In this document: positions 4,578-64,000 of the stretch, one piece after another
Layout of the letters: each line of letters starts with the position of its first letter
Numbering within the stretch: the first letter of the stretch is position 1
Program-made: the position numbers and the translations under genes
Source of the DNA: Isurus oxyrinchus
Taxonomy: Eukaryota
Direction: 5' to 3'
Assembly (NCBI GenBank): GCA_026770705.1
Contig: JANJGN010000052.1
Span: 4,092,001 to 4,156,000, forward strand
DNA: 64,000 bases
Notes under the pieces: model-generated
Told to the model about the DNA's origin: nothing
Seen by the model: only the letters and a program-made list of their open reading frames with translations
Database searches by the model: none

Positions 4578-4617
4578 ATGATCGGGAAATCTTACTTCCT
4601 CCTGTCACTTCTCCAAG
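4578..4617 (+). CDS. Siglec gene A leader exon (MIGKSYFLLSLLQ, phase 1)
   Basis: Acceptor at 4534-4535, ACAATG, hydrophobic stretch, CAAG|GTAATA donor; joins V exon to give ...LLQVGLSQ/EW. Confidence 0.8.
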
Positions 4618-18430: not shown

Positions 18431-18519
18431 GTGGGGGGTGTTCGTGACCATCAGTGTGGAAGGGTTAGGTTTACAGGTTACACAGACCACACACGCACCA
18501 ACAGACACACACACACATG

Positions 18520-18985
18520 NNNNNNNNNNNNNNNNNNNNNNNNNNNNNNNNNNNNNNNNNNNNNNNNNNNNNNNNNNNNNNNNNNNNNNNNNNNNNNNNN
18601 NNNNNNNNNNNNNNNNNNNNNNNNNNNNNNNNNNNNNNNNNNNNNNNNNNNNNNNNNNNNNNNNNNNNNNNNNNNNNNNNNNNNNCATGCACANNNNNNN
18701 NNNNNNNNNNNNNNNNNNNNNNNNNNNNNNNNNNNNNNNNNNNNNNNNNNNNNNNNNNNNNNNNNNNNNNNNNNNNNNNNNNNNNNNNNNNNNNNNNNNN
18801 NNNNNNNNNNNNNNNNNNNNNNNNNNNNNNNNNNNNNNNNNNNNNNNNNNNNNNNNNNNNNNNNNNNNNNNNNNNNNNNNNNNNNNNNNNNNNNNNNNNN
18901 NNNNNNNNNNNNNNNNNNNNNNNNNNNNNNNNNNNNNNNNNNNNNNNNNNNNNNNNNNNNNNNNNNNNNNNNNNNNNNNNNNNNN
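18520..18985. other. N-runs (also 33690-34246, 34985-35123, 35417-35687)
   Basis: Unknown bases, often flanked by CA/TG microsatellite; content cannot be assessed. Confidence 0.99.
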
Positions 18986-19139
18986 TCAGTGCTGCACTGG
19001 AGTCTCGGTGTCAGCTCCGATTCTGTGCTGAAGGAAGGTAAACTCCAGATCAACAAGACCCTGAATTGGATGAGCAAAATCCTTAACAGAGAATTGTAGA
19101 TTTACCCCTCAGTGCTCCATCGATTAAATATAATTCATT

Positions 19140-19389
19140 ACAAAAACAGAATTACCTGGAAAAACTCAGCAGGTCTGGCAGCATCGGCGGAGAAGAAAAG
19201 AGTTGACGTTTCGAGTCTTCATGACCCTTCGACAGAACTAAAGTTCTGTCGAAGGGTCATGAAGACTCGAAACGTCAACTCTTTTCTTCTCCGCCGATGC
19301 TGCCAGACCTGCTGAGTTTTTCCAGGTAATTCTGTTTTTGTTTTGGATTTCCAGCATCCGCAGTTCTCTTTGTTTTTATCTCTGTGTTT
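19140..19389. mobile_element. Penelope-type terminal-repeat fold-back with 100-bp perfect arms and 13-bp target duplication
   Basis: 19140-19239 is the reverse complement of 19242-19341; aatataattcatt at 19127-19139 and 19390-19402. Confidence 0.85.
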
Positions 19390-19659
19390 AATATAATTCA
19401 TTGCCTGTCAAGCCCTTGGGGACATCCTGAGGATGTGAAAGGGAGTTTCTTTAAATCTGGATGGGCAGGGTCTCTGGTGGGAGAATGCTCCTGCAGTGTG
19501 ACAGTTTACATAGGCAGTGCCCATTGTAAATGTGACATAGGAACTTATCTTGAGAGAAGGTGCCTAGAAATGCACACAGGCATCAGATACAGAGACATGA
19601 TGCATGGAGTCTTGCTGTGCACAGTGCTTGCTCACATTAAACACTTGATTTGTTCTTAG

Positions 19660-19941
19660 ATGCTCCACAGAATCTCTCATTTACTTCTCTTGATATGATT
19701 AACGCTTCATCGATCAATATAATTGAGGGGAATTCTGCAGTGATAATCTGCTCTGTCGAGAGCTTCCCAGCTTCTAACCTGACGTGGCGACATCTTAATG
19801 TCCCAATGAACAGAACAAGTTCCAACAATGAGCTGTGGTTGGTGATTCCTCACCTTACATCCAGGGACACTGGAGACTATCAGTGTGTGGCAGAGAATGA
19901 ACATGGAGCAGTGGAGGGGTTCATAACCATCACTGTGGAAT
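19660..19941 (+). CDS. Siglec gene A C2-2 exon
   Basis: 282 nt, phase 1-1; YAPQNL...EGNSAVIICSVESFPASNLTW...DTGDYQCVAENEHG. Confidence 0.93.
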
Positions 19942-19984
19942 GTGAGTGTGGAGATACATTTGTTTGTTTGTTGTCTCCGTGGTC

Positions 19985-22087: not shown

Positions 22088-22429
22088 GTAAGCATTTTAC
22101 TCCCCCTGTCTCTGCTTAAAACTCAAACACTTTCTGTCTGAGGGCAGCTTCCTTGCTGTTGTTTAGCATAACTAGCATCACCTCCCTGCTTTTTTCACCC
22201 TGCGCCTCTCCGAGATACATAAGGAGATATCAGAACAGGGACTGAAAGCTCAGAGAAAGAGGCCAGATTTTAAGGAGTGTCTGAAATGAGGAGAGAGATA
22301 GACATGGAGAGGTTTACGGTGGGAATTCTAGAGCTCGGGGCCCAGGCAGCTGAAGGCACGGCCGCCAATGGTGGAGCGATAGGAATCGGGGGATGGTCAA
22401 GAGGCCGGAATTGGAGGAACGCAGAGACC

Positions 22430-22810
22430 TCGGAGGGATGTAGATGCTGGAGGAGGTTACAGAGATAGGGAGGGTTGTGGGGTCTGGAGGAGGTTACAGA
22501 GATAGGGAGGGTTGTGATGGCTGGAGGAGGTAACAGAGATAGGGAGGGTTATAGGGGCTGGAGGAGGTAACAGAGATAGGGAGGGTTGTGATGGCTGGAG
22601 GAGGTAACAGAGATAGGGAGGGTTATAGGGGCTGGAGGAGGTAACAGAGATAGGGAGGGTTGTAGATGCTGGAGGAGGTAACAGAGATAGGGAGGGTTGT
22701 GGGGTCTGGAGGAGGTTACAGAGATAGGGAGGGTTGAAGGGGCTGGAGGAGGTTACAGAGATAGGGAGGGTTGTAGATGCTGGAGGAGGTAACAGAGATA
22801 GGGAGGGAGT
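22430..22810. repeat. 37-bp minisatellite, G-rich orientation
   Basis: Directly visible; also at 44080-44460. Confidence 0.93.
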
Positions 22811-23117
22811 AAGGAGGAATTTGAAACGATGTAAATTTTAAAATTGTGGCATTGTCGGACCGGGAGCCAGTGTAGCTCAGTGACCAACAGGGAGTGATGT
22901 GTGAACGGGACTCGGTGTGAGTTAGGACATGGGGACAGCAGAGTTTGGGATGAGCTGATGTTTCCGGAGAGTGGAAGATGGGAGGTCAGGCAGGAGAGTG
23001 TTGGGATAGTCGAGTGCGGAGGTAACAAAGGCAGGAATGAGTGTTTCAGTGTTAAGATTCTATCTTACGCTCTAACTTTGCTATGACGTTGTCTCATTGT
23101 TGTCCTTCCCTCCTCAG

Positions 23118-23411
23118 ATAAGCCGGAGATTTCCCAGCAGTCGGAGTGCACTCGGAGGTCAGAGGGGGTCACCTGCGTCTGTGTGGCCAACTCCAACCCA
23201 CCCGGAGACCTCACCTGGCACCTGCCCAGTGCCAACATCAGTGGTAACCAAAAAAACGGAGGTTTTGTGTCGTGGCAGGTCAGAGATGGGCATCTGGTGA
23301 CTGGTTCCCTCACCCTGATGAGACCCCAGGATGAGGGGGGAGTGATGGCATCCTGCTCGGTTCAAAACCCACACGGGGAAGCCATGTTCAAGATGTATCT
23401 GTGGGTCAAAG
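23118..23411 (+). CDS. Siglec gene A membrane-proximal C2-4 exon (MAG domain-5-like)
   Basis: 294 nt, phase 1-1; YKPEISQQSECTRRSEGVTCVCVANSNPP...HLPSANIS...VTGSLTL...ASCSVQNPHG, with the C...CxC...SNP pattern of MAG/CD33-related proximal domains. Confidence 0.92.
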
Positions 23412-24295
23412 GTGAGAGACTCGCTCAGGATCGATCTCCACTCAGCTGGATTGATCCCTAAACTCGAGAATTCCCTCCCTCAACCTCTCCACCTCTCTCT
23501 CTACCTCCTCTAAGATGCTGTGTACAACTTCCCCCTTTGACCAAGCTTTGAATCACCTGACCTCATGTGACAATGGCAACACTTGGTCAACTTGGAGCCA
23601 GGCCGTTCAGGGGGTGATGTCAGGAAGCACTTCTTCACACAAAGGGGAGTGGAAATCTGGAACCCTCTCCCCCAGATAAGCTGCTTCATTGGGTGCAAGA
23701 CAGAAAGCTTTGACAAAATGTCCTTTCTCAGCAATACTCAGGTTCTCCTCCCAAACGATAAAATATTATATATAAACATTTCATAGATTACATCGAGAAA
23801 CATTTTATATAAATGTTACATAGATTACATTGATAAATATTATATATAAATGTTACATAGATTACGTTGAGAAACGCAACAGCTGATTTGTGCAGAGCAA
23901 GATCCCACAAATAACAGTGTGAGGATGAGGTGATAAATGATTATTTTAGTGATGTTAGTTGATACATATATATAGAAATTAAAGATATAATTACACATTT
24001 AGTGAGGGAAACCTGTCCATTTTAACAGGTCTGGGTGTATATGTGACTCCAGTCTCAGACACCATCATGGTTAACTCTTACCTGCCCTCTGAACTGCTCT
24101 CCCAGTTTGGGACCAACCAGTGGTTCAGGAGGAAGACCCCCCACCACCTTCTCAAGGGGAAACTAGGGATGGACAATAAATGTCAGCATTGCCCGAGAAT
24201 GAGTATTTAAACACTGAGTGAGTGTATCGCTTCTCGAGATACATCGGAGCATCATTGTAAACCTGTAGTGCAGTAATTAATGGCTGTTTTTACAG

Positions 24296-24392
24296 GTAGA
24301 GACTCCAGTAAATGGACAGTAGGATTGTTCACGGCTGGGATCATGTTGAGTGTTTTCCTGGCTGGAATCTTCATCTTCATCTGTGTGAGAAA
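24296..24392 (+). CDS. Siglec gene A transmembrane exon (GRDSSKWTVGLFTAGIMLSVFLAGIFIFICVRK), uncharged
   Basis: TTTTACAG acceptor, AA|GTAAGT donor, phase 1 to 2. Confidence 0.9.
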
Positions 24393-24509
24393 GTAAGTCT
24401 GAAGATTTAACTTGATTTTAATATAAACATTTGTTTAGGATTAATTGGACAGTTTTTACAAAGGGCCAGCACAGGCACGATGGGCTGAGTGGCTTCCTCC
24501 CGAGCTGTG

Positions 24510-40120: not shown

Positions 40121-40940
40121 GTACAAATTCATTACTGATCGGAACTCAGGGAATTGGATTCTTTCCTGGAGTGAGGAAGTGAACATTTAATTTTAGAGAA
40201 CAGGGTTAGTGATCACACAGAGAGTGAGTGATTAGCGAGTCAGAGAATATAGCAAAAGCAAAAGTCTCATACGGACTCGAAACACCAACTCTGTTTCTCT
40301 CTCCACAGATGCTGTCAGACCTGCTGAGTTTTTCCAGCATTTTCTGTTTGTGCATCAGAGAGCTTGTTTCAATAGGAATGACAGTGCATTTGTATAGCAC
40401 CTTTAATGCAGTAAAACATCCTTATTGCTTCACAGGATTCCCCCACAAGGGGTAACATCCCCTCAGCATCCACCCTGTCAAACCCCCCACCACCTCAGAA
40501 TCTTATATGTTTCAATAAGATCACCTCTCATTCTTCTAAACTCCAATGGATACAGGGCCCAACCTGCTCAACATTTCCTCATAAGACAAACCCCCTTCAT
40601 CCCAGGAATCAGCCCAGTGATCCTCCTCTGAGCTGCCTCCAATGCAGAGTCTATCCCTCCCTAAGTAAGGAGACCAGAACTGTACACACTGCTCCTGATA
40701 CAATCTCACCAACGCCCTGTACAGTTGTAGCAAGACTTCCCTCCTTTTATACTCCATCCCTTTGCAATAAAGGCCAACATTCCACTTGCCTTCCTCATTC
40801 CGCGCTGTTCCTGAATGCTGACTTTCTGTGATTCATGTACAAGGACACCCAGATCCCTCTGTACCGCATTCTGCTGCCTCTCTCCATTGAAGTAATATTC
40901 TGCTTTTTGATGTTCAGTCCCCTCCCTTGTTGCCTTTCAG

Positions 40941-41230
40941 GAGTGACGTCAGAGGGATGGTCTATGAAGGCGCTGCCTCAGAGGGCCATCAGCAGCTCTT
41001 GTGTGGTTATTCCGTGTAGCTTTGACTTTCCTTCCCACTCTTACACAGCACTGCACGGAGCTTGGTATAAATATTGGTATAGATGGAAATATACCATCAC
41101 ATACACCAAAGATCCCAATTATGGGGTGGCCACATTCGTGGGACGTGCTAAAATAATCGCCGACTTGGAAGGGAAGAATTGTTCGGTGAGGATTGACAGT
41201 CTCAGAGCTGAAGACAGTGATGTGTATTAC
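40941..41230 (+). pseudogene. Siglec gene B V-set exon (MAG/sialoadhesin-like), truncated
   Basis: GWSM...SSCVVIPCSFDFP...LHGAWY...FVGRAKIIADLEGKNCSVRIDSLRAEDSDVYY, then runs into gag sequence and stops at 41240-41242. Confidence 0.88.
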
Positions 41231-42833: not shown

Positions 42834-44084
42834 TGTAGGGTGTGGTGGTGTGTGTCAGCTTCACCTGCGACTTCTGAGCCGTCTGAATCGCTCCCACTCC
42901 CTGGGTTCTAGACCTTGGACTTATTCGGGGCTTGTCACAAAGTGCAGCAGACAACTGGTTTTGGTGCAAGACAAAAACTGAGTTTACTGAAGTCACAAAT
43001 GAACTTCTAACATTAGGATGACACTGAGATTATACAGACTTACAAAGTACACTGAGTTAAGAATGGGGAACACACGGCATAACGAGGGAGAATCACGCTA
43101 CTAATGCCCTTACCCTTGTCCCACCCCCCAAACCCTAACTAAATTGCACTAGGAGAGGTCAGGGGTCACGCTCACCAACCCAGGGTTCCTTGACAGGTGG
43201 AAATCCAGCCAGGTAAGCCGGTTGCAGTTTTGGGGGACGCTCTTAGTGTCCTCTGGGGCCTGTCATCCCCACGTGGTCCTGGTCTGTGGAATCTGTGAAG
43301 GGTCTTCAGTTGGGTGGAGGGCGCGGTTGTGGGTGGTCGATCTTCATGGAGGGCAGCGGTTGTGGCCTTGTTGTCTTCGGTTGAGCCTGCCACCCCGTGC
43401 CCCTCACCGTGATGTTGCCTGTGGGCCTGCAAACCTCCAGATCTCCTTGCTTAAACTCTGTTTCAACCGCTCCCAACTGCTCACTGCCCTGTGTCAGCTT
43501 TCAACACTGCAACCCTTCTGCTGGCTGTTTTCTCTCCCAACTGACTGCCCAGTTATACTACCTTTCGAGTTTCTTATCGCAATCCAAATCAAGGTTCGTT
43601 CTTTGTTTGTCTTTGGTGGGCTTCCCCAGGTGATTGATGTCTCGTTGTTGTTAATGGGCTCGCATGATGTTTATCATTGTCTTCCTGCCCAGTAACTAGT
43701 TTTGAACTGAAAGCCATTGTATGTGTGGAGTATTGATGGGTTCGCATAATTAAATTGCCGGCCTCAGAAGTTAGGAGCGATTATTGATGCAAGATTTAGA
43801 TGGGCTTCAGTTGCGTGTGAAGTGAAGTCTTTCTCTGGGTTGATTGTATTAAAGGGAAGAATGCGTATTCTGTCTCCTCTCGTTGTCTGGTTTCAGGCCA
43901 AACATTCCACACTGCTCTCAATAAGCCCGGACATGTGCAGCCCCAGGCCTTCATGGGCCCAGCCTCCTGTCTGCAGGGTTTTCCACTTAACTCAGCAGTT
44001 TAAAGGTGCAAAAGTGATATCCTTGTTGATGATATGGAAAATGTGGGAATTTTGAGAACCCTTCAAGAGAAAGGGACAGTTACA
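42834..44084. mobile_element. Possible solo LTR
   Basis: About 1.25 kb bounded by TGTA...TACA between two tandem arrays; no clear TSD. Confidence 0.35.
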
Positions 44085-44609
44085 GGGGCTGGAGGAGGTT
44101 ACAGGAATAGGGAGGGGTGTAGGGGTTGAAGGTGGTTACAGAGATGGGGAGGGTTGTGGGGGTTGGAGGTGGTTACAGGTATAGGGAGGGGTGTAGGGGT
44201 TGAAGGTGGTTACAGAGATGGGGAGGGTTGTGGGGGTTGGAGGTGGTTACAGGTATAGGGAGGGGTGTAGGGGTTGAAGGTGGTTACAGAGATGGGGAGG
44301 GTTGTGGGGGTTGGAGGTGGTTACAGATATAGGGAGGGGTGTAGGGGTTGAAGGTGGTTACAGAGATGGGGAGGATTGTAGAGGCAGGTGGAGGCTGCCT
44401 TAGGGAGGGTTGTAGGGGCTGGAGGAAAGGGACAGAGAGAGGAGGTTACAGATATAGGGAGGGAGACAGTCAGAGAGAGAGCCTCCAGGAGATAGAGAGC
44501 GATAGAGAGATTGAGAGACAGACAGAGACTGAGAGAGGGAGAAGAGAGAAGGAGAGTGAGAGAGAGAGAGAACAAGTGTGAAAGATGGTGGAAGGGAAGA
44601 GTGGGGAGG

Positions 44610-45539: not shown

Positions 45540-46140
45540 TCTGCCCTTTCTATCTCACGGATTAGAATATAAGGGGGCAGAGGTCATGCTTCAGTCTACA
45601 TAAAGCCCTGGCTAGACCACACCTGGAGTCACTGTGAGACATTCTGGGCCCCACACCTTAGGAAGGATATATTGACCTCGGAGGGAGAGCAGTGTCAGTT
45701 TACCAGAATGAGACCGGGACTCCAAGGGTTAAATCACAAGGAGAGATTAAACACAAACTCGGCTTGTATTCCCTGGAAGTTAGAATGTTAAGCAGGAGAT
45801 TTGATGAAAGCTTGCATGATATTAAGGGGAACAGATCGGGGGCGATAAAGAGAAACCATTTCCCCTGGTTGGGGGGAGTCTGGGACTCGGGGTCAGAGCC
45901 TAAAAAGGAATTAAATTAGGAAGTACAAAGGGTGGGAGAAATTTGGAACTCTCTTCCCCAAACAGGAACTGATGCACGATCAAGTTGTTCATTTTAAACC
46001 TGTGAGACTGATAGATTTTTGTTATCCAAAGGTATTAAAGGAGATGGGACAAAGGCATATGGGGCTAGTTTGCAGATCAGCCATGAACTCTTTGAATGGT
46101 GGAGCAGGCTCGAGGGGCCAAATGGCCTCCTCCTACCCTG
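45540..46140 (+). mobile_element. CR1 3' fragment
   Basis: GLEYKGAEVMLQ, KLGLYSLEVRML and a CR1 tail. Confidence 0.8.
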
Positions 46141-46529
46141 ATGTAATAGAAACTTACCTGTCAGAAGCCAGTTTATGTTGATGTGAGTCTGAGTCGATGA
46201 CTGAACCCAGTTGGTAACTTGTTCCATACAAAGCAAGAACGTTCATGCCCTTCAATGTTCCTGGATAAACCATTAACAAAGCTGGTGACAGACAGTCTCC
46301 ACATGGTAAACACTGACCGATCAACACATGACATGGCTGTTAACCCCTAAACCTCAGCGTAAATCAGTTCCCCCTCGAGGCCCCTTGTCCGAAATAAAAG
46401 CAACGCACACAATTTGTAAAATAGTAAGTGTCTGGCAGGAAGGAGGAGCAATGAGAGGAGTAAGGGGTTAGGGGGCGTGCGCTTCACCTGATTTGCCGAC
46501 ATAAGAACCAGCCCCTCTGTTTTTGCTAT

Positions 46530-46750
46530 GTTGTGTTGCATCAATATGAACACATATTTGCACAAGGTGAAGGGCGTTGCGGAGGGACTGATAGTTCTCG
46601 GCGCCAGACAGGCAATGTCCCAGTGACCTTACTGCTGGTCCCAGGCCAGTGGGACAGGGAACATCAACACTGCAATATCCAGAAATGGGTGTGATACCAC
46701 ACAGCTACCCACCCGCGGCTGTCCCCTTCAAGTGTTTCAGGTATAAGAGC
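46530..46750 (+). promoter_or_regulatory. Hepcidin-type proximal promoter
   Basis: TTGCATCA at 46536 and TTGCACAA at 46558 (C/EBP-type), GGCGCC+AGAC at 46600-46609 (BMP/SMAD-type), degenerate STAT-like TATCCAGAA at 46676, TATAAGA at 46742. Confidence 0.6.
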
Positions 46751-46818
46751 AGGAAGCTCCTCTAGTTACAAACCAAAGCATCAAAGCAGAGCCAGAAGAT
46801 CAGAAGAGACAGGCAGAG

Positions 46819-46911
46819 ATGGGAAGCTCCCAGATGAAATGGCGACTTGTCTTGTTCACTCTGACTTTGCTGCTCTCCCTGCAGCTGAGTCACTTCTTCT
46901 CCTTGTCGAGG
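46819..46911 (+). pseudogene. hamp: Orphan hepcidin-like exon 1 (MGSSQMKWRLVLFTLTLLLSLQLSHFFSLSR, phase 0)
   Basis: 31-codon signal-peptide exon with AGG|GTAAGC phase-0 donor, as in HAMP exon 1; its intron shares diagnostic minisatellite variants with the minus-strand hepcidin locus. Confidence 0.65.
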
Positions 46912-47109
46912 GTAAGCTAAGAGATGTCCCTCTGGGTGAGGTGTTTCTTGCACATGACTCTCCGTCTACCACCCAGATAGACTGGTCACTTCCGCAGTTT
47001 GATATTATTATGTTCGTGCCTTTAATATTGTCGCCCTCTATGAATTTAACATCATTTCCTTCTGTCATTTCCCCTGAAATTCTCATTCTTGTTTTCAATC
47101 CCTCCTCAG

Positions 47110-48520
47110 CGACTCCCTATCTCTGTAACCTCCTCCAGCCCGTACAACCCTCCCTATCTCTGTAAATTCCTCCAGCCCCTACACCCCTCCCTATCTCTGT
47201 AACCTCCTCCAGCCCGTACAACCCTCCCTATCTCTGTAAACTCCTCCAGCCCCTACAACCCTCCCTATCTCTGTAACCTCCACCAGGCCTTACAACCCTC
47301 CCTATCTCTGTAACCTCCTCCAGCCCCTACACCCCTCCCTATCTCTGTAACCTCCTCCAGCCCCTACAACCCTCCCTATCTCTGTAACTTCCTCCAGCCC
47401 CTACAACCCTCCCTATCTCTGTAACCTCCTCCAGCCCGTACAACCCTCCCTATCTCTGTAACCTCCTCCAGCCCCTACAACCCTCCCTATCTCTGTAACC
47501 TCCTCCAGCCCCTACAACCCTCCCTATCTCTGTAACATCCTCCAGCCCCTACAACAATCCCTATCTCTGTAACATCCTACAGTCTCTACAACCCTCCCTA
47601 TCTCTGTAACCTCCTCCAGTCCCTATAACCCTCCCTATCTCTGTAACCTCCTCCAGACCCGACAACCCTCCCTATCTATGTAACCTCCTACAGTCCCCAC
47701 AACACTCCCTATCTCTGTAACCTCCCCCAGGCCCCACAACCCTCACGATCACTGTAACCTCCTCCAGACCCTACAACCCTCCCTATCTCTGTAACCTGCT
47801 CCAGACCCTACAACCCTCCCTATCGCTGTAACCTGCTCCAGACCCTACAACCCTCCCTATCTCTGTAACCTGCTCCAGACCCTACAACCCTCCCTATCTC
47901 TGTAAAATCCTCCAGGCCCCACAACCCTCACAATCACTGTAACCTCCTCCAGCCCCTACATCCTCCTGAACTCTATAAGCTTCTCTCCACACTATAACTC
48001 TCCCTATCTCTGTAACCTACTGTGGCCCCTACAGCAGTGTCTATTTTGGTAACCTCCTCCAGCCTCTACAACCCTCCCTACATCTGTAACCTCCTCCAGC
48101 CCCCACAACTCCCCCATCTCTGTAACCTCCTACAGCCTCTACAACCCTCCCTATCTCTGTAACTTCCTACAGCCCTTACAACCCTCCCTATCTCTGTAAC
48201 CTCCTACAGCCTCTACAGCCCTCCCTATTTCTGTAACCTCCTCCAGCCCCTACAACCCTCCCTATCTCTGTAACCTCCTACAGCCTCTACAACCCTCCCT
48301 ATCTCTGTAACTTCCTAGAGCCCTTACAACCCTCCCTATCTCTGTAACCTCCTTCAGCCCCTACAACCCTCCCTATCTCAGGAGCCTCCTCCAGCCCCTA
48401 CAACCCTCCCTATCTCTGTAACCTCCTCCAGCCCCTACAACCCTCCCTATCTCAGGAGCCTCCTCCAGCCCCTACAACCCTCCCTATCTCTGTAACCTCC
48501 TCCAGCCCCTACAATCCTCT
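47110..48520. repeat. 37-bp minisatellite array
   Basis: Directly visible; variant units at 47950-48050 match 63581-63680 inverted. Confidence 0.95.
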
Positions 48521-49610
48521 GAGATCTCTGCACTCCTCTAATTCCGGTCTCTTGAGCTACCCCCGATTCCCATCGTTGTGCCATTGGAAGCCATGCCTTC
48601 TGCTGCCTGGGGCCCCGAGCTCTGGAATTTTATCTCTACACCTCTCCCCACCTCTCCCTCTCTATCTCTCTCTCTCTCACTCTCTCTCTCTCACTCTCTC
48701 CCTCTCTCTCTCTCGCTATCCCTTTTATCCCTCTTTTAATATTCTTCATAACACAACAACATAAGAACATTAGAAATAGGAACAGGAGCAGGCCATTCGG
48801 CCCCTCGAGCCTGCTCTCGCTGATCTGGTTGTGGCCTTAACTCCATTTTCCTGCCTGTCCCACAAACCCTTGACTCCCTTGTCGATCAAAAACCTGCCTC
48901 ACTCAGCCTTGAGTCTATTCAATGGCCCAGCCTCCACTGCTCTCTGGGGAAGAGAATTCCACAGGCTAGCGCCCCTCTGAGAGAGGAAATTCCTCCTCAT
49001 CTCAGTCTTAAATGGGAGAGCCCTCATTCCGAAACTGTGCTCCCTGGTTCTAGATTCCCCCACGAGGGGGAAACATCCTCCCAGCATCCACCCTGTCAAG
49101 CCCCCTCGGAATCGGATATGTTTCAATAAGGTCACCCCTCATTCTTCTAAACTCCAATGGATACAGGCCCAACCTGCTCAACATTTCCTCACAGGACAAA
49201 CCCTTTAATCCCAGGAATCAGCCCAGTGAAGCTTCTCTGAACTGCCTGTACACAATGATCCTGTTACAATCTCACTAACGCCCTGTGCAGCTGTTGCAAG
49301 ACTTCCCTCCTTTTATACTCCATCCCTTTGCAATAAAGGCCAACATTCCACTTGCCTTCCTCATTCCGTGCTGTTCCTGAATGCTGACTTTCTGTGATTC
49401 ATGTACAAGGACACCCAGATCACTCTGTACTGCATTCTGCAGCCTGTCTCCAGTTAAATAATATCCTGTTTTTCTATTCTTCCTGCCAAAATAATTTGTT
49501 GCCATTCTCCTCAGTATTAACCATCCTCCAAATTCAGCCTCATCTGTAAATATCGGGTTCAGTGGATCCACAAACCATTCAGAGATAAATATTGAGATTT
49601 CTCTCCCCAG

Positions 49611-49978
49611 TTGGACTGTCACAAGAGTGGAAAGGTGACACTCCACGAGAGATGACAGCGCAGGAAGGTTCGTGTGTACAGATTCCATGTCATTACAGTT
49701 ATCCATCGTGTCTGGAAAACCAACCGCGAGGTGGAGTCTGGTTTAATAATAAGAAACAGATTCCCTGGGCTCCCATAGCCTTTCACTCCAAGGATCACAG
49801 TCACCAGTTACCACGGTTCCGCCATCGGACCCGGCTGTCTGGAGACCTGAAAGATGGCGACTGTTCCCTGATTATAAACAACATCTGACGGGAAATGCAG
49901 GACCTTATTTTTTCAGAATAGAATTTGACAATGGTCCGAGACATAACTATTACCCTGTAACCCAGCTTCACGTTTCTG
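49611..49978 (+). pseudogene. Siglec gene C V-set exon, disabled
   Basis: Close paralog of V2/V1; AGA to TGA at 49886-49888 plus a 1-nt deletion (368 nt). Confidence 0.92.
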
Positions 49979-50791
49979 GTAAGTGCTGTGTTATAATTAC
50001 TCAACAATTCACATTCAACACTCAGTGGGAAATAACACAAACTGTGATGTTTACATATTAACACAAAACACAGCTTATTATAACACACTGTCTGATTCTC
50101 AATAACCTGGTGATAGCTTCCAGTTCAGTCCTAAAGCAACCTCTAATACTCACTTTAATATCAATGATTAAATGTATTGACTGTGTCCATCAATGTTTTC
50201 GGGATATCCACTCCCACTGATCTCCCTAACCCTGTTTGACAGTCTTACATATCGACAAAAGAATGATTCACATTTCTTTAGCACCTTTCACCACCTCTGT
50301 CGGTCGCAAATGGATTCACAACCAATGAAATAATTCCTGAAATGTCACCCTTGTTGTAATATGGGAAACACAGCAGCCAATTTGTGCACAGGAAGCTCCC
50401 AGAAACAGCAATGTGATCAATAACCTGATCATCTGCTTTAGATGCCGGTTCAGTGATTGGTTCAAATGGATTCTCTCCTGCTGGGATCTGGATAGAATTT
50501 AAATCTGGCAGATTTCGGAGAAAGTAACAAGCCAGTGTGTCAGGAACTGTGAGCTGATCCCCCACCCTCACCTGGGATTGTCAATTCAATTGTCTCAAAG
50601 TGGAAGTGAATTCATCTGAGAGACAGAAACTCCACTAAGTCTGAAAATAGGAAATTCTCTCCTGATCATTGTAACCTCTCAGTTCTGATATCATCCTTGT
50701 AAAAGTGCTTTTTCTTGTGGGACTGTGATTTCTATCTGAACTGATGCTTCACGTTATATTTCTCTAAAAGGATCCATTCTCTGTCTGTTAG

Positions 50792-51088
50792 ATTTCACAG
50801 ATAAACCCATGATATTCCCTGCTGAAATTATTGCAGGAAAGCGTGTGGATGTAAGCTGCACCTTCAACACAACGTGCAATGGAACAGCAGCACCTGTCTT
50901 AACCTGGGACACTCCCACTGACGTACCTGGATCAGTCTCAAACACTGTAACTCAGCATGGTGTCACTCTGTCCTATACTTGTGTTCTGACCCTGATCCCA
51001 TCACTCAAACACCATGGACACACTCTCAGCTGCAGAGTGAGATATCCATCAGTTTCATCGGAGCAGACCCTCGTACTAACTGTGCAAG
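50792..51088 (+). pseudogene. Siglec gene C C2-1 exon (open frame)
   Basis: 297 nt, nearly identical to 14589-14885. Confidence 0.92.
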
Positions 51089-51417
51089 GTAAGTATGGAC
51101 ATCCTTCATTCTACATCAGCACACCCTCAGCGCTGACCCTCTGACAGTGCAGCCCGTTCTCAGTGTCCACATTCTCATGCCTCTCAAAGTGCTTCACAGT
51201 CCATAGAAGTTAACTGATCTTTATTTGATTGTTGCTGAATGAAGAGACAAGCTGTTTAAACTTTACATCTCACACACATTATTTTCCATGGCAACACCTT
51301 CGAGACCACTTGCCAATCTATCAGCACTCTCTTCCCTTTAAATATAAATTGTTGTTCACTCTCTGTTGGTAAACATGCGATCTGTCTTGTTGAGTCCTGC
51401 CCTGATATCTGAATATC

Positions 51418-51556
51418 ACAATGAACAGAACAAGTTCCAACAATGAGCTGTGGTTGGTGATTCCTCACGTTACATCCAGGGACACTGGAGACTATCAGTG
51501 TGTGGCAGAGAATGAACATGGAGCAGTGCAGGGATTCATAACCATCACTGTGGAAT
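51418..51556 (+). pseudogene. Siglec gene C 3' half of C2-2 exon
   Basis: MNRTSSNNELWLVIPHVTSRDTGDYQC...ITVE|GTGAGT matches 19806-19941; 5' half and acceptor missing. Confidence 0.9.
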
Positions 51557-53231
51557 GTGAGTGTACACAGATTTCATCATCTGTCTCAGATTGAAACATG
51601 ACACAAACACAGACAAATATACAGACCTAAATAGACACCTGCAGATACACAATCCCTCGTATATGAGCACACACAAAGACACAAACAAACACACTAGCAC
51701 AATGCTCCCCAGTGGGTTACCTGACCTCCCTCAGTGCTGCACCGGAGAGTTGACCTGGATTCTGAGATTTCTGTTCCCTTTCATGTTTATAGAAGAATAT
51801 GGAAATTGCAAAGTCTATTACAGACACTCAGATGCATAGAGACACTCACAGATACTCTCTGTCTCTCCAACTCTCTATCCTCCTTTAAGAAGCTTCCTGA
51901 AACCTAACCCTTTGACCAGTCAATTGTCCCAACTCCTCCTTACGTGAATCCGTGTGAAATTTTGTTTGAGTATCTGAGAGTAAGAGAGAGGTGGAGAGGT
52001 TTAGGAAGGGAATTCCTGTTGGTGAAAAGCTTACATCATGTTCTCACTTTTCCAGTGCCCGTATTTCACCTGATGTCCAATGTCCTTGTTTATAATAGGG
52101 ATTGCCTATGTAAACGTCACGCTGTAGTTACACTGTGGTGGCACGGTAGCACTTAACCCTTGCATCTCTCAGCTTTTCAAGCAAATCCACTTCCCAGTTT
52201 GCTCCACAAGCTGTGAGTTCATCAGAATTAAATTATTTCTCAAACGATAGATTTGATGTCATTTTATTGAAAACTTCCTCAGTGCCTCCCTGAAGGGTTT
52301 ACACTCTCTGGGAAGCAGGAATAGGCTGGATGTTGGGGAGCTCATCTTTTCCCAGAGAGTAGGGATCCTCGGGAATGTGCTGTCAGTGGGTGTGGTGGTT
52401 GCTGTTTCTATGTTGCCTTCAAGAGGGATCTGGAGTGGTTACTGACTGGGGGAGAGATCATGGAAGCGGAGAATGATACAGCACAGGAGGAGGCCATTCA
52501 GCCCATGGTGCCTGTGCCAGGTCTTTCAATGTTCTATCCAATCAGATCCACTAACCACCACTCCACTTTGCCCCCATCTTCCTCCTTCAAGTGTTTATCC
52601 AATTCCCCTTTTGAAAGTTCCAATTGAATCTGCTTCCACCGCCCTTTCAGGCAGCACCTTCCAGATCACAACAACTCACTCTGTCAAAACAAATTCTCCT
52701 CATCTCCCCCTCCGGTTCATCAATCTGTGTCCCTCTGGTTACCGACCCTCCTGCCCCTTAAATACATCGATCCTGTTCACATCACCCACTCCCTGTGGGA
52801 GTGAGTTCCACATTCTCCTCTCTCTCTGGGTAAAGATTGGAACTGTCTATTAAGCGGGGGGTGTAAGTCCGTGGGGGAGTCCATCTCGATCCTGCCCGAT
52901 TCGCACACACGTCCGAGATGGATTTCCACCCTGCACTAAACGTTTCCAGAATTTTCTACAGCACAATCCTGTACACAGCGATGGAGAGAAACATTGGACA
53001 GGGAGTCCAACAACACAATGATCCATTCTCACCAATGTTCCACGCTAAGGGGAAAGTTCCGATTGTCCACTCTTAGAGTGTTTACAATGAAAACATTCAT
53101 TCCACATTGAATCCCAGTGGATGGGTCAATATTACAGCAAATGTTGCAGTGATATGAAGCTTGATTGTTCAGCCAGAGTGAGAGATTGAAAGCGGAGAGT
53201 CAGTGATGATTTCTTTCTGTGTGTTCTCTAG

Positions 53232-53371
53232 ACAGTGGAGGAGAGATTCTGCACGTGATCCTGATCCTGGGAATACGAGCTGTGATATTCCTTGTGGCTG
53301 TGGTTATCACTATCGCTGGAGTCTGTGTCTGGGAGAGACAAACAGTGAAAGGAAGTCGACAGACTGTTTGA
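53232..53371 (+). pseudogene. Siglec gene C transmembrane exon with intramembrane Arg (SGGEILHVILILGIRAVIFLVAVVITIAGVCVWERQTVKGSRQTV*)
   Basis: CTCTAG acceptor, phase 1; long hydrophobic run with a central R; short Tyr-free tail; downstream 54215-54335 is homologous to the gene A 3'UTR at 29493-29620; AATAAA at 54353. Confidence 0.8.
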
Positions 53372-57004: not shown

Positions 57005-58075
57005 TGAGATTCTCTCTTGTTGGAGCTGGTCATTGCCTGGCACTTGTGTGGCATGAATGTTACTTATCACCTGTCAGCCCAAGCCTGGATGTTGTCCAGG
57101 TCTTGCTGCATTTGGACATAACTTGCTTCAGTATCTGAGGAGCCGTGAATGATGCTGAACATTGTGCAAACATCAGCAAACATCCCCACTTCTGACCTTA
57201 TGATGGAAGGAAGGTCATTGATGAAGCAGCTGAAGATGGTTGGGCCTAGGACACTACCCTGAGCAACTCCTGCAGTGATGTCCTGGAACTGAGATGATTG
57301 ACCCCCAATAATCACAACCATTTTCCTTTGTGCTGGGTATGACTCCAAGCAGCACAGAGTTTTCCCCCGATTCCCATTGACTCCAGTTTTGCTCGGGCTC
57401 CTTGATTTGCCACACTCAGTCAAATGCTGCCTTGATGTCAAGGACAGTCACTCTCACCTCTGGAGTTCAGCTCATTTGTGCATGTTTGAACCAAGGCTGT
57501 AATGAGGCCAGGAGCTGAATGATCCTGGTGGAACACAAACTGAGCGTCAGTGAGCAGGTTCTTGCTAAGCAGGTGCTGCTTGCAAGCGCTGTTGATGACC
57601 CCTTCCATCACTTTAGTAATGATCAAGAATAGACTGCTGGGTAATTGGCTGGGTTGGATTTGTCCTGCTTTTTGTGTACAGGACGTACCCCATAGCCGGG
57701 TAGTTGCCAGTGTTGCAGCTGTACTAGAAAATTCCAGAAAAGCTTGGCTAGGGGCGCAGCAAGTTCTGGAGCACAAGTCTTCAGTACTGTTGCCAGAATA
57801 TTTTCAGGGCCTGGAGCATTTACAATATCCAGTGCCTTCAGCCCTTTCTTGATATCACGTGGAATTAATCGAATTGGCTAAAGATTGGCATCTCTGATGC
57901 TGGGGACCTCCGGAGGAGGCCGAGATGGATCACCCACTCAGCACTTCTGGCTGAAGATTGTTGCGCATGCTTCAGTCTTGTCTTTTGCACTGGTGTTCTG
58001 GGCTCCTCCATCATTGAGGATGGGGATATTTGTGGAGTCTCCTCCTCCAGTGAGTTGTTTAATTGTCCACGACTG
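57005..58075 (-). mobile_element. CR1/L2-class LINE RT fragment
   Basis: GVAQGSVLGPTIFSCFINDL...MFADVC; same family as 29655-31750. Confidence 0.87.
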
Positions 58076-60490: not shown

Positions 60491-60606
60491 CTAATATCTA
60501 CAGCAGAGCCACAAGTCTCATTTGGTTCTCTCCAATTACAGCAGTTACAGCAGAATCTGCAGAGCTGCTGTCTGCCCATTCTCTTCTGGCGCTGCAGCAA
60601 GGAGCC
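60491..60606 (-). pseudogene. hamp: Hepcidin exon 3 (GSLLQRQKR|MGRQQLCRFCCNCCNWREPNETCG[-1 fs]xCCRY*)
   Basis: TTTTCCAG acceptor, phase 0, furin site RQKR, CxxCCxCC...CG; the last CCRY-TAG is one base out of frame (116 nt rather than 117). Confidence 0.9.
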
Positions 60607-61566
60607 CTGGAAAAGCAGGAGGACAATAGGTGAGAACATTCCGGAAAGAAAGAAGGCATCATTTCAATCAGGCGCGTCATTGGAAGGAGGATGGCGCATT
60701 TCTATAGCGCCTTTCCCCTCCTCAGGATGGCCCAAAGTGTTCCACAGCTGAAGGAAGGACTTTTTCTGAAGTGAGCTCACCGCTGTAATGTAGGAAACGC
60801 AGCAGGCAATTCACGCACAGCAAGATCCCACAAACAGAAATGTGATAATGGCCCCGATTTTCAGTTTTTTACCAATGTCAGTTGAGGGATAAATGTTTGC
60901 CCCAGGAAAGCAGACATAACTCCACCCATCCACCCCCCACCACCCCCTCCACACATACCCCCAACTCCTGAAACACTTCATTTAAATTGTGGCCATGGAA
61001 TCCTCTACATCCATCTGAGAGGGCAGATGTTGTCTCAGTTTAACATCTCATCTGAAAGACAGCGCCTTCAACAGTGCAGCACCCCCTCAGTACTGACCCT
61101 CCGACTGTGCATCACTCCCTCAGTACTGACCGTCTGACAATGCAGCACCCCCTCAGTACTGACCCTCCGACTGTGCAGTCCCCCGCTGGTACTGACCCTC
61201 TGACAGTGCAGCACTCCAAGACTGACCGTCTGACAATGCAGCACCCCCGCAGTACTGACCCTCCGACTGTCCTGCCCCCCCGCCGGTACTGACCCTCCGA
61301 CAGCTCGGTAATTTCTCAATTACGCCTGGTGGTCCTTTTAACTCCGAGCTGAGAGTTGCAGAGAATCGAGCAGACACCCTGAACTGACACTTGCAGTGCA
61401 AGTACTGGGAGCGCGCTGGTCATTATCATGCTGCTGTCTGTGGGATCTTACTGTGCGCCAATGGCTGATTCTTTTCCCACAGTACATCAGTGACCTCACA
61501 TGAAAGAAAAAAAGCACTTGATTGTCTGCGAAACAGTTTGGGACGTCCTGATGTGTTGGAAGGCGC

Positions 61567-61743
61567 TAGAGAAATGCAAGAGTTGACGTTTCGAGTCCTC
61601 ATGACCCTTCTGAGGACTCGAAACGTCAACTCTTTTCTTCTCCGCCGATGCTGCCAGACCTGCTGAGTTTTTTCAGGTAATTCTGTTTTTGTTTTGGATT
61701 TCCAGCATCTGCAGTTTTCTTTGTTTTTATAGAGAAATGCAAG
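61567..61743. mobile_element. Short Penelope-type fold-back with 14-bp target duplication
   Basis: Same sequence as 19242-19389; tagagaaatgcaag at 61567-61580 and 61730-61743. Confidence 0.8.
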
Positions 61744-62745
61744 TCCTCTTTGTCTTTCACTCGATCCTCTAAGGTGTCTGTTGATTAACCAGCCTCTCGG
61801 TGTTTGATGTAGGCCTGGTTATAAACAGTTAGAAGGATCAAATATCAAAAGTGCTTTGGCTGACAGTCAAACCGATTGCGCATTCGGAGAGATTAGATAC
61901 GGTCTGCGCACAATGACTCCAGTCTCTGGCACTGACTGCCGCCTGGGGTCTCCCTTCCACATAACACTCACAACTTGCATTTACACAGCGCCTCTGACAT
62001 TGCAAAATGTCCCAGCCCACATTACCGGAGCGTAAATCAGAGAGAAGTCTAACACTGAGTCACATATGGAGATATTAGGGATAGGTGACCAAAAGCTTGG
62101 TCAAAGATGTCAGTTTTTAAGGAGCGTCTTAAAGGAGAGAGAGAGAGAGAGGCAGAGAGGTTAAGGGAGGGTATTCCGGAGCTCAGGGCCCCAGGCAGCT
62201 GAAGGCACGGCCACCAATGGTGGAGCGATGGGAATCAGGGGGACCCGGGAGATGCAGTAATGTCAGAGATTTTGGAGGAACATCGGGACCGGAGGAGGTG
62301 TTCTCCTGCTCCATATCTCTCTCTCTCTTCCTCTCATCCACTCCTCCTCTCCCTGTCTCTCTCTCTCCTACTCTTCCTCTCAATTGCCCTCTCTCCCAAT
62401 CTTTCTCTCCTCTCTCCCTTTTCCTGTCTCTCTCCCTCTCTCTCTCCCTGTCTCCTTCTCCCACTCTGTATCTCTCCCTCTCTCTCACACTATTTTTGTA
62501 CCTTTCGCTCACTCTGTAACTCTCCCTTTCCTGTTAATTTCTCTCTCTTGGACAATCTCTCTTCCCTTTTCACTTTCCCGCACTCTGCATCTCTTCTTTA
62601 ATTTCTCCCTCTGTCACTCTCTCCCACCTATGTTCTTTCCCTTTCACCCCTCCCCGTCCCACTCTCTGTCTCTCTCTTCCAATCCCTCCCTCCCTCATTC
62701 CATCCCTCTCTCCGACTCTCGACTCCCAGCCTCTCTTTAACCCAC

Positions 62746-62803: not shown

Positions 62804-63334
62804 CTGTGGGGATATGTTCAGTTCCTTGGAATTGCCTCTTCCCAGCTTTGCAAAAAAAAGGGGGCGGCGGGGGGCTCGATTTCAAACATGCCTCCTGAGT
62901 ATAACCGAGACAGACTGCCACTGAAATCAGCTTGAAATCAGAAATCAGAGGGCAGACGGGGGACTCGGTTTAATGTCTCATTCAACATTGTTGTGCTCCC
63001 TCAGTACTAACCCTTTGACACTGCAGCACTCCCTCAGTACTAACCCTTCGATAGTGCTGCACTCCCACCCTATTGTCCCTCCGTCAGTGCAGCGCTCCCT
63101 CAGTACTGACCCTCCGACAGTGCAACACTTCCACAGTACTGACCCTGTAACAATGCAGCACTTCCTCAGTACTGACCTCCGACAGTATAGCACTCACTCA
63201 GTACTGTCCCTCCAATAGTGCAACACTTCCACACTACCGACCCTCTGACAGTGCAGCACTCCCTCAGCACGGAGTGTTGACCGACGTTATGGGACTGAAT
63301 TCCCTGGAGTGAGACTCAGACCAGAGATTTAGGT

Positions 63335-64000
63335 AGGGTTGTTCCGGCTGGAGGAGGTTACAGAGATCGGGAGGGTTGTAGAGGCTGTAGGAGGTAACAG
63401 AGATAGGGAGGATTCTAGAGGCTGTAGGAGGTTACAGAGATAGGGAGGGTTGTAGGGGCTGTAGGAGGTTACAGAGATAGGGAGGTGAGTAGGGGCTGTA
63501 GGAGGTTAAAGAGATGGGGGGGTTGTGGGGGCTGGAGGAGGTTACAGAGGTAGGGAGGGTTGTAGAGGCTGGAGGAGGTTACCAAAATAGATACTGTTGT
63601 AGGGGCCACAGTAGGTTACAGAGATAGGGAGAGTTATAGTGTGGAGAGGACGTTATAGAGTTCATGAGCATTGTAGGGGCTGGAGGAGGTTACAGTGATT
63701 CTGAGGGTCGTGGGGCCTGGAGGAGGTTACAGAGATAGGGAGGGTTGTAGGGTCTGGAGGAGGTTACAGAGATAGGGAGGGTTGTAGGGTCTGGAGCAGG
63801 TTACAGAGATAGGGAGGGTTGTAGGGTCTAGAGGAGGTTACAGTGATCATGAGGGTTGTGGGGCCTGGGGGAGGTTACAGAGATAGGTAGGGTTGTAGGG
63901 GCTGGAGGAGGTTACAGAGATAGGGAGGTTTATAGGGGCTGGAGGAGGTTACAGAGATAGGGAGGGTTGTAGGGGCTGGAGGAGGTTACGGAGATAGGGA
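63335..64000. repeat. 37-bp minisatellite, G-rich orientation (probable hepcidin intron 1)
   Basis: Directly visible; inverted paralog of the 47110-48520 array. Confidence 0.93.

What the first reader, a model, noticed from the sequence alone, without database searches (positions are those of the whole stretch)
46530..53371. Chimeric locus: hepcidin promoter and exon 1 placed upstream of a Siglec ectodomain
Seen: a TATA box, GGCGCCAGAC, C/EBP-type sites and a phase-0 signal-peptide exon (MGSSQMKW...), with no hepcidin exon 2/3 after it on the + strand. The next exons are Siglec V, C2 and TM (48765-51115 duplicates 12560-14912). No Siglec-type leader was found between them. Known: mammalian HAMP is driven by a GGCGCC BMP element, STAT3 and C/EBP, and its exon 1 ends in phase 0. 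Inference: an inverted partial hepcidin duplication captured Siglec gene C and could put it under iron/inflammation control. The hepcidin frame ends soon after splicing (LDCHKSGKVTLHER*). A second ATG at 46839 is in phase with V but reaches the TGA at 49886, giving at most a truncated V peptide. A non-coding or NMD transcript is most likely in this haplotype.
Basis: partly seen in the sequence, partly recalled or inferred. Interest (0 to 1): 0.85.

Follow-up and report, generated by a model that had tools for sequence, protein, structure and literature searches.

The report
Orphan hepcidin first exon beside Siglec pseudogene
In a shark genome, the promoter and first exon of a hepcidin (iron/defence peptide) gene sit alone upstream of a broken, headless copy of a neighbouring Siglec immune-receptor gene; this looks like debris of rearrangement in a hepcidin/Siglec gene cluster, not a working fusion gene.

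Summary
Exon 46819-46911 is a true hepcidin-family exon 1. It is 29/31 residues identical to exon 1 of an 88-aa basking-shark protein that carries the Pfam Hepcidin domain. It has a TATA box, a strong phase-0 donor and a GGCGCC-type element upstream. No hepcidin exon 2 or 3 follows on the + strand. The next + strand exons are a decayed, 5'-truncated copy of the window's two-V Siglec-like gene. That copy has no Siglec leader, a nonsense codon plus a 1-bp deletion in V, and only half of its second C-type Ig exon.

The 'capture' reading is not supported. In a public run that appears to be RNA, the exon-1 sequence is extremely abundant, but the listed consensus of contigs crossing the donor runs into hepcidin exon 2. 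That exon is absent from this window, so the RNA most likely comes from intact paralogues. No fusion can be in frame, because exon 1 ends in phase 0 and V starts in phase 1.

Whether the solo exon arose by inverted partial duplication or by an inversion that split one gene needs sequence right of the window.

The scan has already found two expressed hepcidin-Siglec chimeras elsewhere in this genome. This is a third, non-coding relic.

The parts
46536..46565 (+). two C/EBP-like motifs (TTGCATCAA, TTGCACAA) in the putative promoter
   Evidence: consensus matches only, function not tested
46600..46614 (+). GGCGCCAGACAGGCA, a BMP-response-like element about 170 bp upstream of the inferred transcript start
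   Evidence: GGCGCC alone is at chance level. The bipartite pattern is unique in the window (expected 0.04) but was chosen post hoc. The GGCGCC core is unchanged in contigs of related organisms; 46611/46612 vary
46742..46747 (+). TATA box (TATAAG)
   Evidence: The contig word depth of run X1 rises about nine-fold in the bin that starts at 46773, about 30 bp downstream
46773..46818 (+). inferred 5' UTR of hepcidin exon 1 (start approximate)
   Evidence: depth step, from contigs only, so the start is not exact
46819..46911 (+). hepcidin-family exon 1 coding part (31-aa signal peptide), ends in phase 0 at donor AGG|GTAAGC
   Evidence: 29/31 identical to exon 1 of P0152, a basking-shark hepcidin-domain protein. 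Donor score 8.8 bits. X1 contigs leave the window sequence just past the donor, at 46913; the first two letters of the next exon equal the intron's GT
46912..47112 (+). unique start of the intron after exon 1
   Evidence: no other copy in the window. Held with the same junction into the satellite by contigs of X1, X7 and X8
47113..48519 (+). 37-bp satellite array (38 copies)
   Evidence: Monomers are closest to the inverted array at 63322-64000 (34-37 of 37). Two 3' monomers are closer to the array at 11523-12481
48520..48666 (+). spacer that belongs to the satellite module; inverted homologues at 22291-22452 and 62135-62294
48641..48761 (+). (CT)n tract and short unique DNA: the junction between hepcidin-type and Siglec-type DNA
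   Evidence: Homology to 12558 onward starts at 48762, at the edge of an interspersed repeat
48762..51120 (+). block 95.1% identical to 12558-14917 (intron before V2, V2 exon, C2 exon of the intact Siglec-like gene)
49611..49978 (+). Siglec V-set exon, copy C, disabled: AGA>TGA at 49886-49888 and a 1-bp deletion at 49894/49895; phase-1 acceptor
   Evidence: The intact paralogue 13409-13777 hits Pfam V-set and Ig_CD22 and Siglec structures
50790..51088 (+). C2-set Ig exon of copy C (boundaries approximate)
   Evidence: Pfam C2-set_2 E 2.7e-7; tblastn with family proteins
51404..51564 (+). 3' half only of the next Ig exon (matches 19789-19949 at 95.7%); the 5' half and acceptor are missing
53232..53371 (+). 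transmembrane exon with an Arg in the membrane span, ending in a stop (activating-receptor type)
   Evidence: no homologue elsewhere in the window
60505..60606 (-). hepcidin exon 3 (furin site and Cys-rich peptide) with a frameshift before the last Cys pair; convergent with exon 1
   Evidence: (Pfam Hepcidin E 2e-5)
57419..57524 (-). homologue of the alternative 3' exon of basking-shark hepcidin isoform X3 (a retroelement fragment), collinear with exon 3
   Evidence: 92% identity
63322..64000 (-). inverted copy of the 37-bp satellite, running off the window
   Evidence: (47632-48307 against 64000-63322, 90.6%)
4578..4617 (+). for contrast: the genuine Siglec-family leader exon (phase 1) of the intact gene; the only copy in the window

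Best explanation
The element at 46.5-46.9 kb is a solo hepcidin promoter plus first exon. It is cut off from any hepcidin exon 2 or 3 on its strand.

About 200 bp after the exon comes a satellite-plus-spacer module. An inverted copy of the same module lies upstream of the minus-strand hepcidin exon 3. At a (CT)n tract (48.64-48.76 kb) the DNA switches to a decayed copy of the neighbouring Siglec-like gene. That copy starts in the intron before its second V exon, so it lacks the family's leader and V1.

The copy is a pseudogene: a nonsense codon and a frameshift in V, and a half-deleted Ig exon. Its own Arg-containing TM exon marks it as a former activating-type partner.

The juxtaposition is a by-product of rearrangement in a hepcidin/Siglec cluster. 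No protein fusion is possible, because exon 1 ends in phase 0 and V starts in phase 1. At most the promoter gives a short-ORF, NMD-prone read-through transcript.

Shown: the identity of exon 1, the anatomy and the lesions. Inferred: the rearrangement origin, and that the abundant RNA comes from paralogues.
For: - Exon 1 identity. The only database proteins that share the leader are two isoforms of Cetorhinus maximus LOC144671611 (94% over the 31 aa, E 2.7e-6 against 5.8 billion sequences). Isoform X2 carries Pfam Hepcidin (E 1.5e-11). Its exon 1/2 boundary falls exactly at the window's donor.
- RNA. In run X1 the word depth is 195,000-468,000 over 46773-46925 against about 500 in the flanks. 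Thirteen contigs continue past 46913 into one sequence (agreement 0.98) that translates as VDTALGSSTI. This matches basking-shark exon 2 (VDSAVGSLTI) and not V exon C.
- That exon 2 is nowhere in the window.
- The Siglec family leader is only at 4578-4617, and none of 150 family representatives starts with the hepcidin leader.
- Lesions of copy C.
- Block homology and junction.
- Satellite relations.
- In the basking shark a hepcidin gene and a Siglec-12-like gene have accessions 20 apart and are both recorded on a contig of 13,667,426 nt, so probably the same contig.
Against: - RNA contigs cannot be assigned to this locus or to paralogues with an identical exon 1, so the promoter here could be active.
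- Contigs drop rare variants, and 187 loose ends were not shown, so a minor 46911^49611 junction is not excluded.
- X1 is labelled RNA only by a guess.
- The V-exon lesions rest on one assembly and were not checked with reads.
- No intact hepcidin locus of this species was available to map where homology ends.
Confidence: 0.75

Rival explanations
1. One reading: the hepcidin promoter and exon 1 are transcribed here and spliced to V exon C. This gives a chimeric non-coding or NMD transcript, or a 45-aa peptide, that puts Siglec-C sequences under hepcidin-type regulation.
For: - The promoter motifs and exon are intact, and the dominant expressed sequence matches the window at every exon position listed.
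- The donor is strong.
- The acceptor at 49610/49611 is the same as in the intact paralogues.
- Two other loci of this genome are noted by the scan as expressed hepcidin-Siglec chimeras (I did not check them).
Against: - The listed consensus of contigs crossing the donor goes to hepcidin exon 2.
- No junction to 49611 was seen.
- About 2.7 kb, including a 1.4-kb satellite, lies between the two exons.
- The product would have no Siglec domain.
Confidence: 0.3
2. Origin by inversion rather than duplication. One + strand hepcidin gene (exon 1, intron with the satellite module, exon 3, alternative exon) was split by an inversion of about 48.7-62.1 kb between or within satellite modules. Exon 3 was turned onto the minus strand and the Siglec copy was brought behind exon 1.
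For: - Inverted, closely related satellite-plus-spacer modules lie at both ends: 47113-48666 and 62135-62294 with 63322-64000.
- Undoing the inversion gives a gene of about 3.5 kb, a little under the 4.2-4.6 kb stretches of other hepcidin notes.
- Exon 3 and the alternative exon are collinear, as in the basking-shark gene.
Against: - No exon 2 lies between the module and exon 3, so an extra loss is needed.
- The same layout fits an inverted partial duplication whose exon 1 lies just right of 64000.
Confidence: 0.35
3. Assembly mis-join. Exon 1 belongs to an intact hepcidin gene, and the assembler joined it to the Siglec copy through the repeat.
For: - A 1.4-kb satellite and a (CT)n tract lie at the junction.
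- Two 3' monomers of the array resemble the array of the Siglec intron.
- The window has several N gaps elsewhere.
Against: - The spacer after the satellite is of the hepcidin-side type, and the switch happens at a short (CT)n tract, not inside the long array.
- Copy C differs from the intact gene by 5% and has its own lesions and its own TM exon, so it is a real separate locus.
Confidence: 0.08
4. The exon is the ordinary leader of the Siglec-like gene C. This was my own first guess.
For: It is a signal-peptide exon on the right strand, 2.7 kb upstream of a V exon. A cryptic donor after 46888 would be in phase.
Against: - The family's leader is a different, phase-1 exon.
- None of 150 relatives has this leader.
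- The exon matches hepcidin exon 1.
- The cryptic donor scores -2.5 bits.
Confidence: 0.02

Closest known systems
Hepcidin (HAMP) genes; closest sequence: Cetorhinus maximus LOC144671611 isoform X2 (XP_078389754.1, 88 aa, Pfam PF06446)
   Same: - Exon 1 is 29/31 identical, with the same phase-0 end.
- There is a TATA box, C/EBP-like sites and a GGCGCC element, as in mammalian HAMP promoters (the last point is from my own knowledge).
- It lies beside Siglec genes, as HAMP lies beside MAG and CD22 in mammals. My own knowledge for the order; PMC4453067 places HAMP, USF2 and the FFAR genes in one mammalian locus and treats MAG as near FFAR2 in human.
   Different: Only the promoter and exon 1 are present. 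No pro-region exon and no Cys-rich exon follow on this strand, so the locus cannot encode a hepcidin.
Siglec family (CD33-related Siglecs, MAG, CD22); shark models named 'sialic acid-binding Ig-like lectin 8/12/13/14'
   Same: - The V exon of the intact paralogue matches Siglec-5, CD33 and Siglec-7/8 structures (E about 1e-15 to 1e-12). Its YFFRIE motif aligns with Siglec-5 YFFRVE; that this Arg is the sialic-acid-binding residue is my own knowledge.
- It also hits Pfam V-set and Ig_CD22.
- C2-set exon.
- Arg-containing TM, as in activating Siglecs.
   Different: Copy C has no leader, a stop and a frameshift before the Arg motif, and a half-deleted Ig exon. It is a pseudogene fragment.
Paired inhibitory/activating Siglecs whose activating partner is often a pseudogene (SIGLEC5/14, SIGLEC11/16 in primates; from my own knowledge)
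   Same: The ectodomain block is near-identical (95%) to that of a neighbouring gene with ITIM-type tails, joined to a different, charged TM exon. The activating copy is disabled.
   Different: Here the 5' end has been replaced by a fragment of a different gene (hepcidin). Gene conversion was not tested.
Hepcidin-Siglec chimeric loci noted earlier by this scan in the same genome (s1-866030, s1-868551)
   Same: The front part of a hepcidin gene is placed before Siglec-derived exons in the same cluster.
   Different: Those loci keep exons 1-2, are joined in frame to Siglec tail exons and have RNA support for the junction, according to those notes. Here there is exon 1 only, out of phase with a broken V exon, and no junction was seen.

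Membership tests
Hepcidin (HAMP) gene | Signal-peptide first exon homologous to that of hepcidin genes | tested here: met
   29/31 identity to exon 1 of P0152, which has Pfam Hepcidin at E 1.5e-11
Hepcidin (HAMP) gene | Pro-region exon and furin site on the same strand downstream | tested here: not met
   No match to exon 2 of P0152, or to the exon 2 read from RNA, anywhere in the window
Hepcidin (HAMP) gene | Exon for the 8-Cys mature peptide on the same strand | tested here: not met
   The only hepcidin-like Cys-rich exon is on the minus strand at 60505-60606, and it is frameshifted
Hepcidin (HAMP) gene | Transcript spliced from exon 1 to exon 2 | tested here: inconclusive
   Seen in X1 contigs, but exon 2 is not in this window, so the RNA most likely comes from paralogues with the same exon 1
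Hepcidin (HAMP) gene | Regulation by BMP/SMAD, STAT3 and C/EBP | not testable with these tools
   Motif matches only: GGCGCC-type element and C/EBP-like sites are present, no TTCNNNGAA site
Siglec | N-terminal V-set domain with the conserved sialic-acid-binding Arg (YFFR motif), in frame | tested here: not met
   The V exon is homologous, but a TGA at 49886 and a 1-bp deletion precede the motif. The motif is met in paralogues A and B
Siglec | Leader exon in phase 1 upstream of V | tested here: not met
   The family leader is only at 4578-4617. The exon before copy C is hepcidin exon 1 in phase 0
Siglec | C2-set domains followed by a TM segment | tested here: met
   C2-set_2 at E 2.7e-7. TM exon 53232-53371. 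The second C-type exon is truncated
Siglec | Sialic acid binding | not testable with these tools
   No assay was possible, and the domain cannot be translated in this copy
Chimeric (fusion) gene | A transcript that joins the parts of the two parent genes | tested here: inconclusive
   No 46911^49611 junction among the contigs shown. Only contigs were available and rare forms are dropped. V exon C was not in the stretch laid (45600-47112), so such a junction could appear only as a loose end.
Chimeric (fusion) gene | An open reading frame across the junction | tested here: not met
   Phase 0 against phase 1: a stop after 14 codons. The in-phase ATG at 46839 meets the TGA at 49886

The most novel reading that the evidence does not exclude
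The hepcidin promoter at 46.7 kb is active in liver and drives a chimeric transcript through the Siglec-C exons. In some haplotypes with an intact V exon, use of the cryptic phase-1 donor after 46888 would then yield an activating Siglec with a hepcidin signal peptide under iron/inflammation control. Together with the two other chimeras noted in this genome, this would mean that sharks repeatedly rewire Siglec exons to the hepcidin promoter.
Probability: 0.04. Interest if true: 0.65.

Novelty: new member of a known kind. Interest (0 to 1): 0.3.

Why it matters
The locus itself is most likely dead DNA: a solo promoter-exon relic next to a receptor pseudogene.

Its value is as a marker of how the shark hepcidin/Siglec cluster evolves. 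Hepcidin copies are interleaved with Siglec genes, which extends the HAMP-MAG-CD22 neighbourhood known from mammals. A satellite-plus-spacer module recurs at the rearrangement borders. Fragments of the two families have been joined at least three times in this genome.

For annotation it is a warning. The very high RNA signal on this exon should not be credited to this locus, and no 'hepcidin-Siglec fusion protein' should be called here.

Tried and rejected
- My first guess, that the exon is simply the Siglec leader, was rejected.
- The cryptic phase-1 donor after 46888 scores -2.5 bits and has no listed RNA support.
- Searches for hepcidin exon 2 on either strand found only chance-level matches. 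I used the basking-shark peptide, the 32 letters read from RNA, and ungapped BLOSUM windows. The best minus-strand candidate (60749-60781) looks to me like a SINE-like repeat, judged by eye and not checked against a repeat library.
- A search with the minus-strand hepcidin ORF found no database relative.
- The bacterial promoter/terminator scan is irrelevant to a vertebrate.
- The search of earlier findings by sequence was blank, which per the operators means nothing. Word searches for satellite or inversion notes were blank. There are no notes from the window to the right.
- The satellite 47113-48519 was kept out of read laying, because that tool turns away long repeats.
Full report
**What the window is.** The repeats and the protein matches show a shark genome. 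It carries a 37-bp satellite, a 33-bp repeat and retroelement ORFs. The best protein relatives come from Cetorhinus, Scyliorhinus and Mustelus. The + strand holds an intact Siglec-like gene with these exons:
- leader at 4578-4617 (MIGKSYFLLSLLQ, phase 1)
- V1 at 10810-11178
- V2 at 13409-13777
- C2 at about 14576-14890
- Ig exons at 19662-19940 and 23099-23449
- TM at 24298-24393
- duplicated tail cassettes up to 29.5 kb

Relatives in other sharks carry two to four V-like stretches. They are named sialic acid-binding Ig-like lectins by NCBI. The V2 exon hits Pfam V-set and Ig_CD22. Its best solved relatives are Siglec-5, CD33, Siglec-7/8, sialoadhesin and MAG. Its YFFRIE motif aligns with Siglec-5 YFFRVE; that this Arg is the conserved sialic-acid-binding residue is my own knowledge.

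**Checking the observation.**
- TATAAG at 46742, GGCGCCAGAC at 46600, and TTGCACAA/TTGCATCAA at 46536-46565.
- GGCGCC alone is no more frequent than chance (2 seen, 2.03 expected).
- A longer bipartite BMP-element pattern that I recalled from the literature is unique to this site (expected 0.04). I chose that pattern after seeing the site.
- The exon 46819-46911 encodes a 31-aa signal peptide. It ends at the strong donor AGG|GTAAGC in phase 0 (8.8 bits).
- The promoter and exon are single-copy in the window.
- The block 48762-51120 is 95.1% identical to 12558-14917.
- V exon C (49611-49978) has the same acceptor and donor as V1 and V2. It carries AGA>TGA at 49886 and a 1-bp deletion at 49894/49895.
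- The exon 1 frame spliced to 49611 stops after 14 codons. The ATG at 46839 is in phase with V and meets the TGA.

**Is it hepcidin exon 1?** Yes. I searched with the open frame 46747-46911, extended upstream so that proteins of 30-96 aa could be candidates. It returned exactly two proteins from 5.8 billion. Both are isoforms of Cetorhinus maximus LOC144671611 and are 94% identical over the 31-aa exon. Isoform X2 (88 aa) has a signal exon, a 19-aa pro-exon, a furin site and an 8-Cys peptide. It hits Pfam Hepcidin at E 1.5e-11. Its exon 1 ends where the window's donor lies.

The window also holds a hepcidin exon 3, on the minus strand only (60505-60606). Its Pfam Hepcidin match has E 2e-5, and a frameshift precedes the last Cys pair. 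A homologue of the alternative last exon of basking-shark isoform X3 lies 3 kb further down the same strand (57419-57524).

My first guess had been that the exon is the Siglec gene's own leader. That is refuted. The family leader is a different phase-1 exon, and none of 150 relatives starts like hepcidin.

**RNA.** Only contigs were available. Run X1 has the same organism label as other holders and is RNA by a guess. It matches the window at 99-100% outside the exon.
- Its word depth is 195,000-468,000 over 46773-46925. It is 0 in the next bin and about 500 further on.
- The depth step fits a start about 30 bp after the TATA box.
- Thirteen contigs run past 46913 into one consensus (agreement 0.98). 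In frame it reads VDTALGSSTI, which matches hepcidin exon 2 of the basking shark (VDSAVGSLTI). It is not the start of V exon C.
- These 32 letters occur nowhere in the window, even allowing 9 mismatches. No exon 2-like peptide is found on either strand.

The abundant RNA therefore most likely comes from intact hepcidin paralogues with the same exon 1. The scan has noted several very highly transcribed copies in this genome. Expression of this particular promoter is neither shown nor excluded. No junction to 49611 was listed. Contigs drop rare forms, and I could not lay the leader and the V exon together, because the satellite between them is a long repeat that the tool turns away.

**The Siglec copy.** Copy C begins in the intron before V2, so it lacks the leader and V1. 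Besides the two lesions in V, only the 3' half of its next Ig exon survives (51404-51564 matches 19789-19949 at 95.7%). About 4.6 kb is missing relative to the intact gene. It ends in its own TM exon with an Arg in the membrane span and an immediate stop (53232-53371). It is therefore a dead activating-type partner of the inhibitory gene. This resembles the paired Siglecs of primates (my own knowledge).

**The junction and the origin.**
- After exon 1 come 200 unique bases, then the 37-bp satellite (47113-48519), then a 150-bp spacer (48520-48666).
- The same satellite-plus-spacer module occurs inverted at 22291-22807. It occurs again at 62135-62294 with 63322-64000, upstream of the minus-strand exon 3.
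- The monomers of array C are closest to that inverted array (34-37 of 37). They are more distant from the array in the V1-V2 intron (30-33), except for two monomers at its 3' end.
- The switch to Siglec-type DNA is at the (CT)n tract 48641-48761. Homology to the intact gene starts at 48762, at the edge of an interspersed repeat.
- Contigs of two related organisms (X7, X8) hold the same exon 1, 200-bp stretch and satellite junction at about 97% identity. This arrangement is therefore probably the normal start of hepcidin intron 1 (inference).

Two origins fit. One is an inverted partial duplication of a hepcidin gene whose own exon 1 lies just right of the window. The other is an inversion between or within modules that split one gene. 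In both cases exon 2 is missing from the expected place. A mis-join is unlikely, because the switch is not inside the long array and copy C has its own lesions and its own TM exon.

**Comparison with what is known.** HAMP lies next to Siglec genes (MAG, CD22) in mammals. The gene order is from my own knowledge; PMC4453067 names HAMP, USF2 and the FFAR genes in one mammalian locus and treats MAG as near FFAR2 in human. In the basking shark the hepcidin gene and a Siglec-12-like gene have accessions 20 apart and are both recorded on a contig of 13,667,426 nt, probably the same contig. The neighbourhood is therefore ancestral, not a capture. The locus fails the defining tests of a hepcidin gene (no pro-exon and no Cys-rich exon on its strand). 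It fails those of a Siglec gene (no leader, V not translatable). It also fails those of a fusion gene (no open frame, no junction seen). The scan found two expressed in-frame hepcidin-Siglec tail chimeras elsewhere in this genome (s1-866030, s1-868551; I did not check them). This is a third and weaker case.

**Verdict.** Exon 1 is truly hepcidin and the locus is truly a juxtaposition of two gene fragments, but it is a relic. Interest is 0.3.

Noticed in passing
window 40904-41230 (+): A divergent Siglec/MAG-like V exon (CVVIPCSFDFP..., 25-33% identical to the family V domains), 5.6 kb upstream of the hepcidin exon 1. The frame stops where the YYFR-type motif is expected. No Pfam hit at E 0.1.
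   Followed up: partly
window 60505-60606 (-) and 57419-57524 (-): Minus-strand hepcidin exon 3 with a 1-base frameshift before the last Cys pair. Downstream is a retroelement fragment 92% identical to the alternative 3' exon of basking-shark hepcidin isoform X3. No exon 2 lies between the satellite and exon 3.
   Followed up: partly
window 11523-12481 (+), 22432-22807 (-), 44066-44445 (-), 47113-48519 (+), 63322-64000 (-): Five arrays of one 37-bp satellite in 64 kb. Three of them carry the same ~150-bp flanking spacer (22291-22452, 48520-48666, 62135-62294). This suggests a mobile or repeatedly duplicated module that marks rearrangement borders in this cluster.
   Followed up: partly
window 46415-46419: A contig of a related organism (X7) has 366 extra letters here. 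A contig of another related organism (X8) stops matching at 46419 and runs on unlike the window. The same contigs change the TATA region (46741-46756).
   Followed up: no
window 61611-61730 vs 19260-19379 and 19140-19221: A short element 97% identical between the hepcidin flank and an intron of the intact Siglec gene. It is present there in both orientations and could be a young MITE-like repeat.
   Followed up: no
window 51120-51404 vs 14917-19789: Copy C lacks about 4.6 kb present in the intact gene, including the 5' half of an Ig exon. The intact gene has two N gaps in this interval (18520-18985), so the comparison is incomplete.
   Followed up: partly
proteins P0151/P0152 (Cetorhinus maximus LOC144671611): NCBI names this basking-shark hepcidin 'uncharacterized protein'. 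One of its isoforms splices exons 1-2 to a reverse-transcriptase fragment instead of the Cys-rich exon. Like the minus-strand exon 3 here, its mature peptide has a long loop between the Cys pairs.
   Followed up: partly
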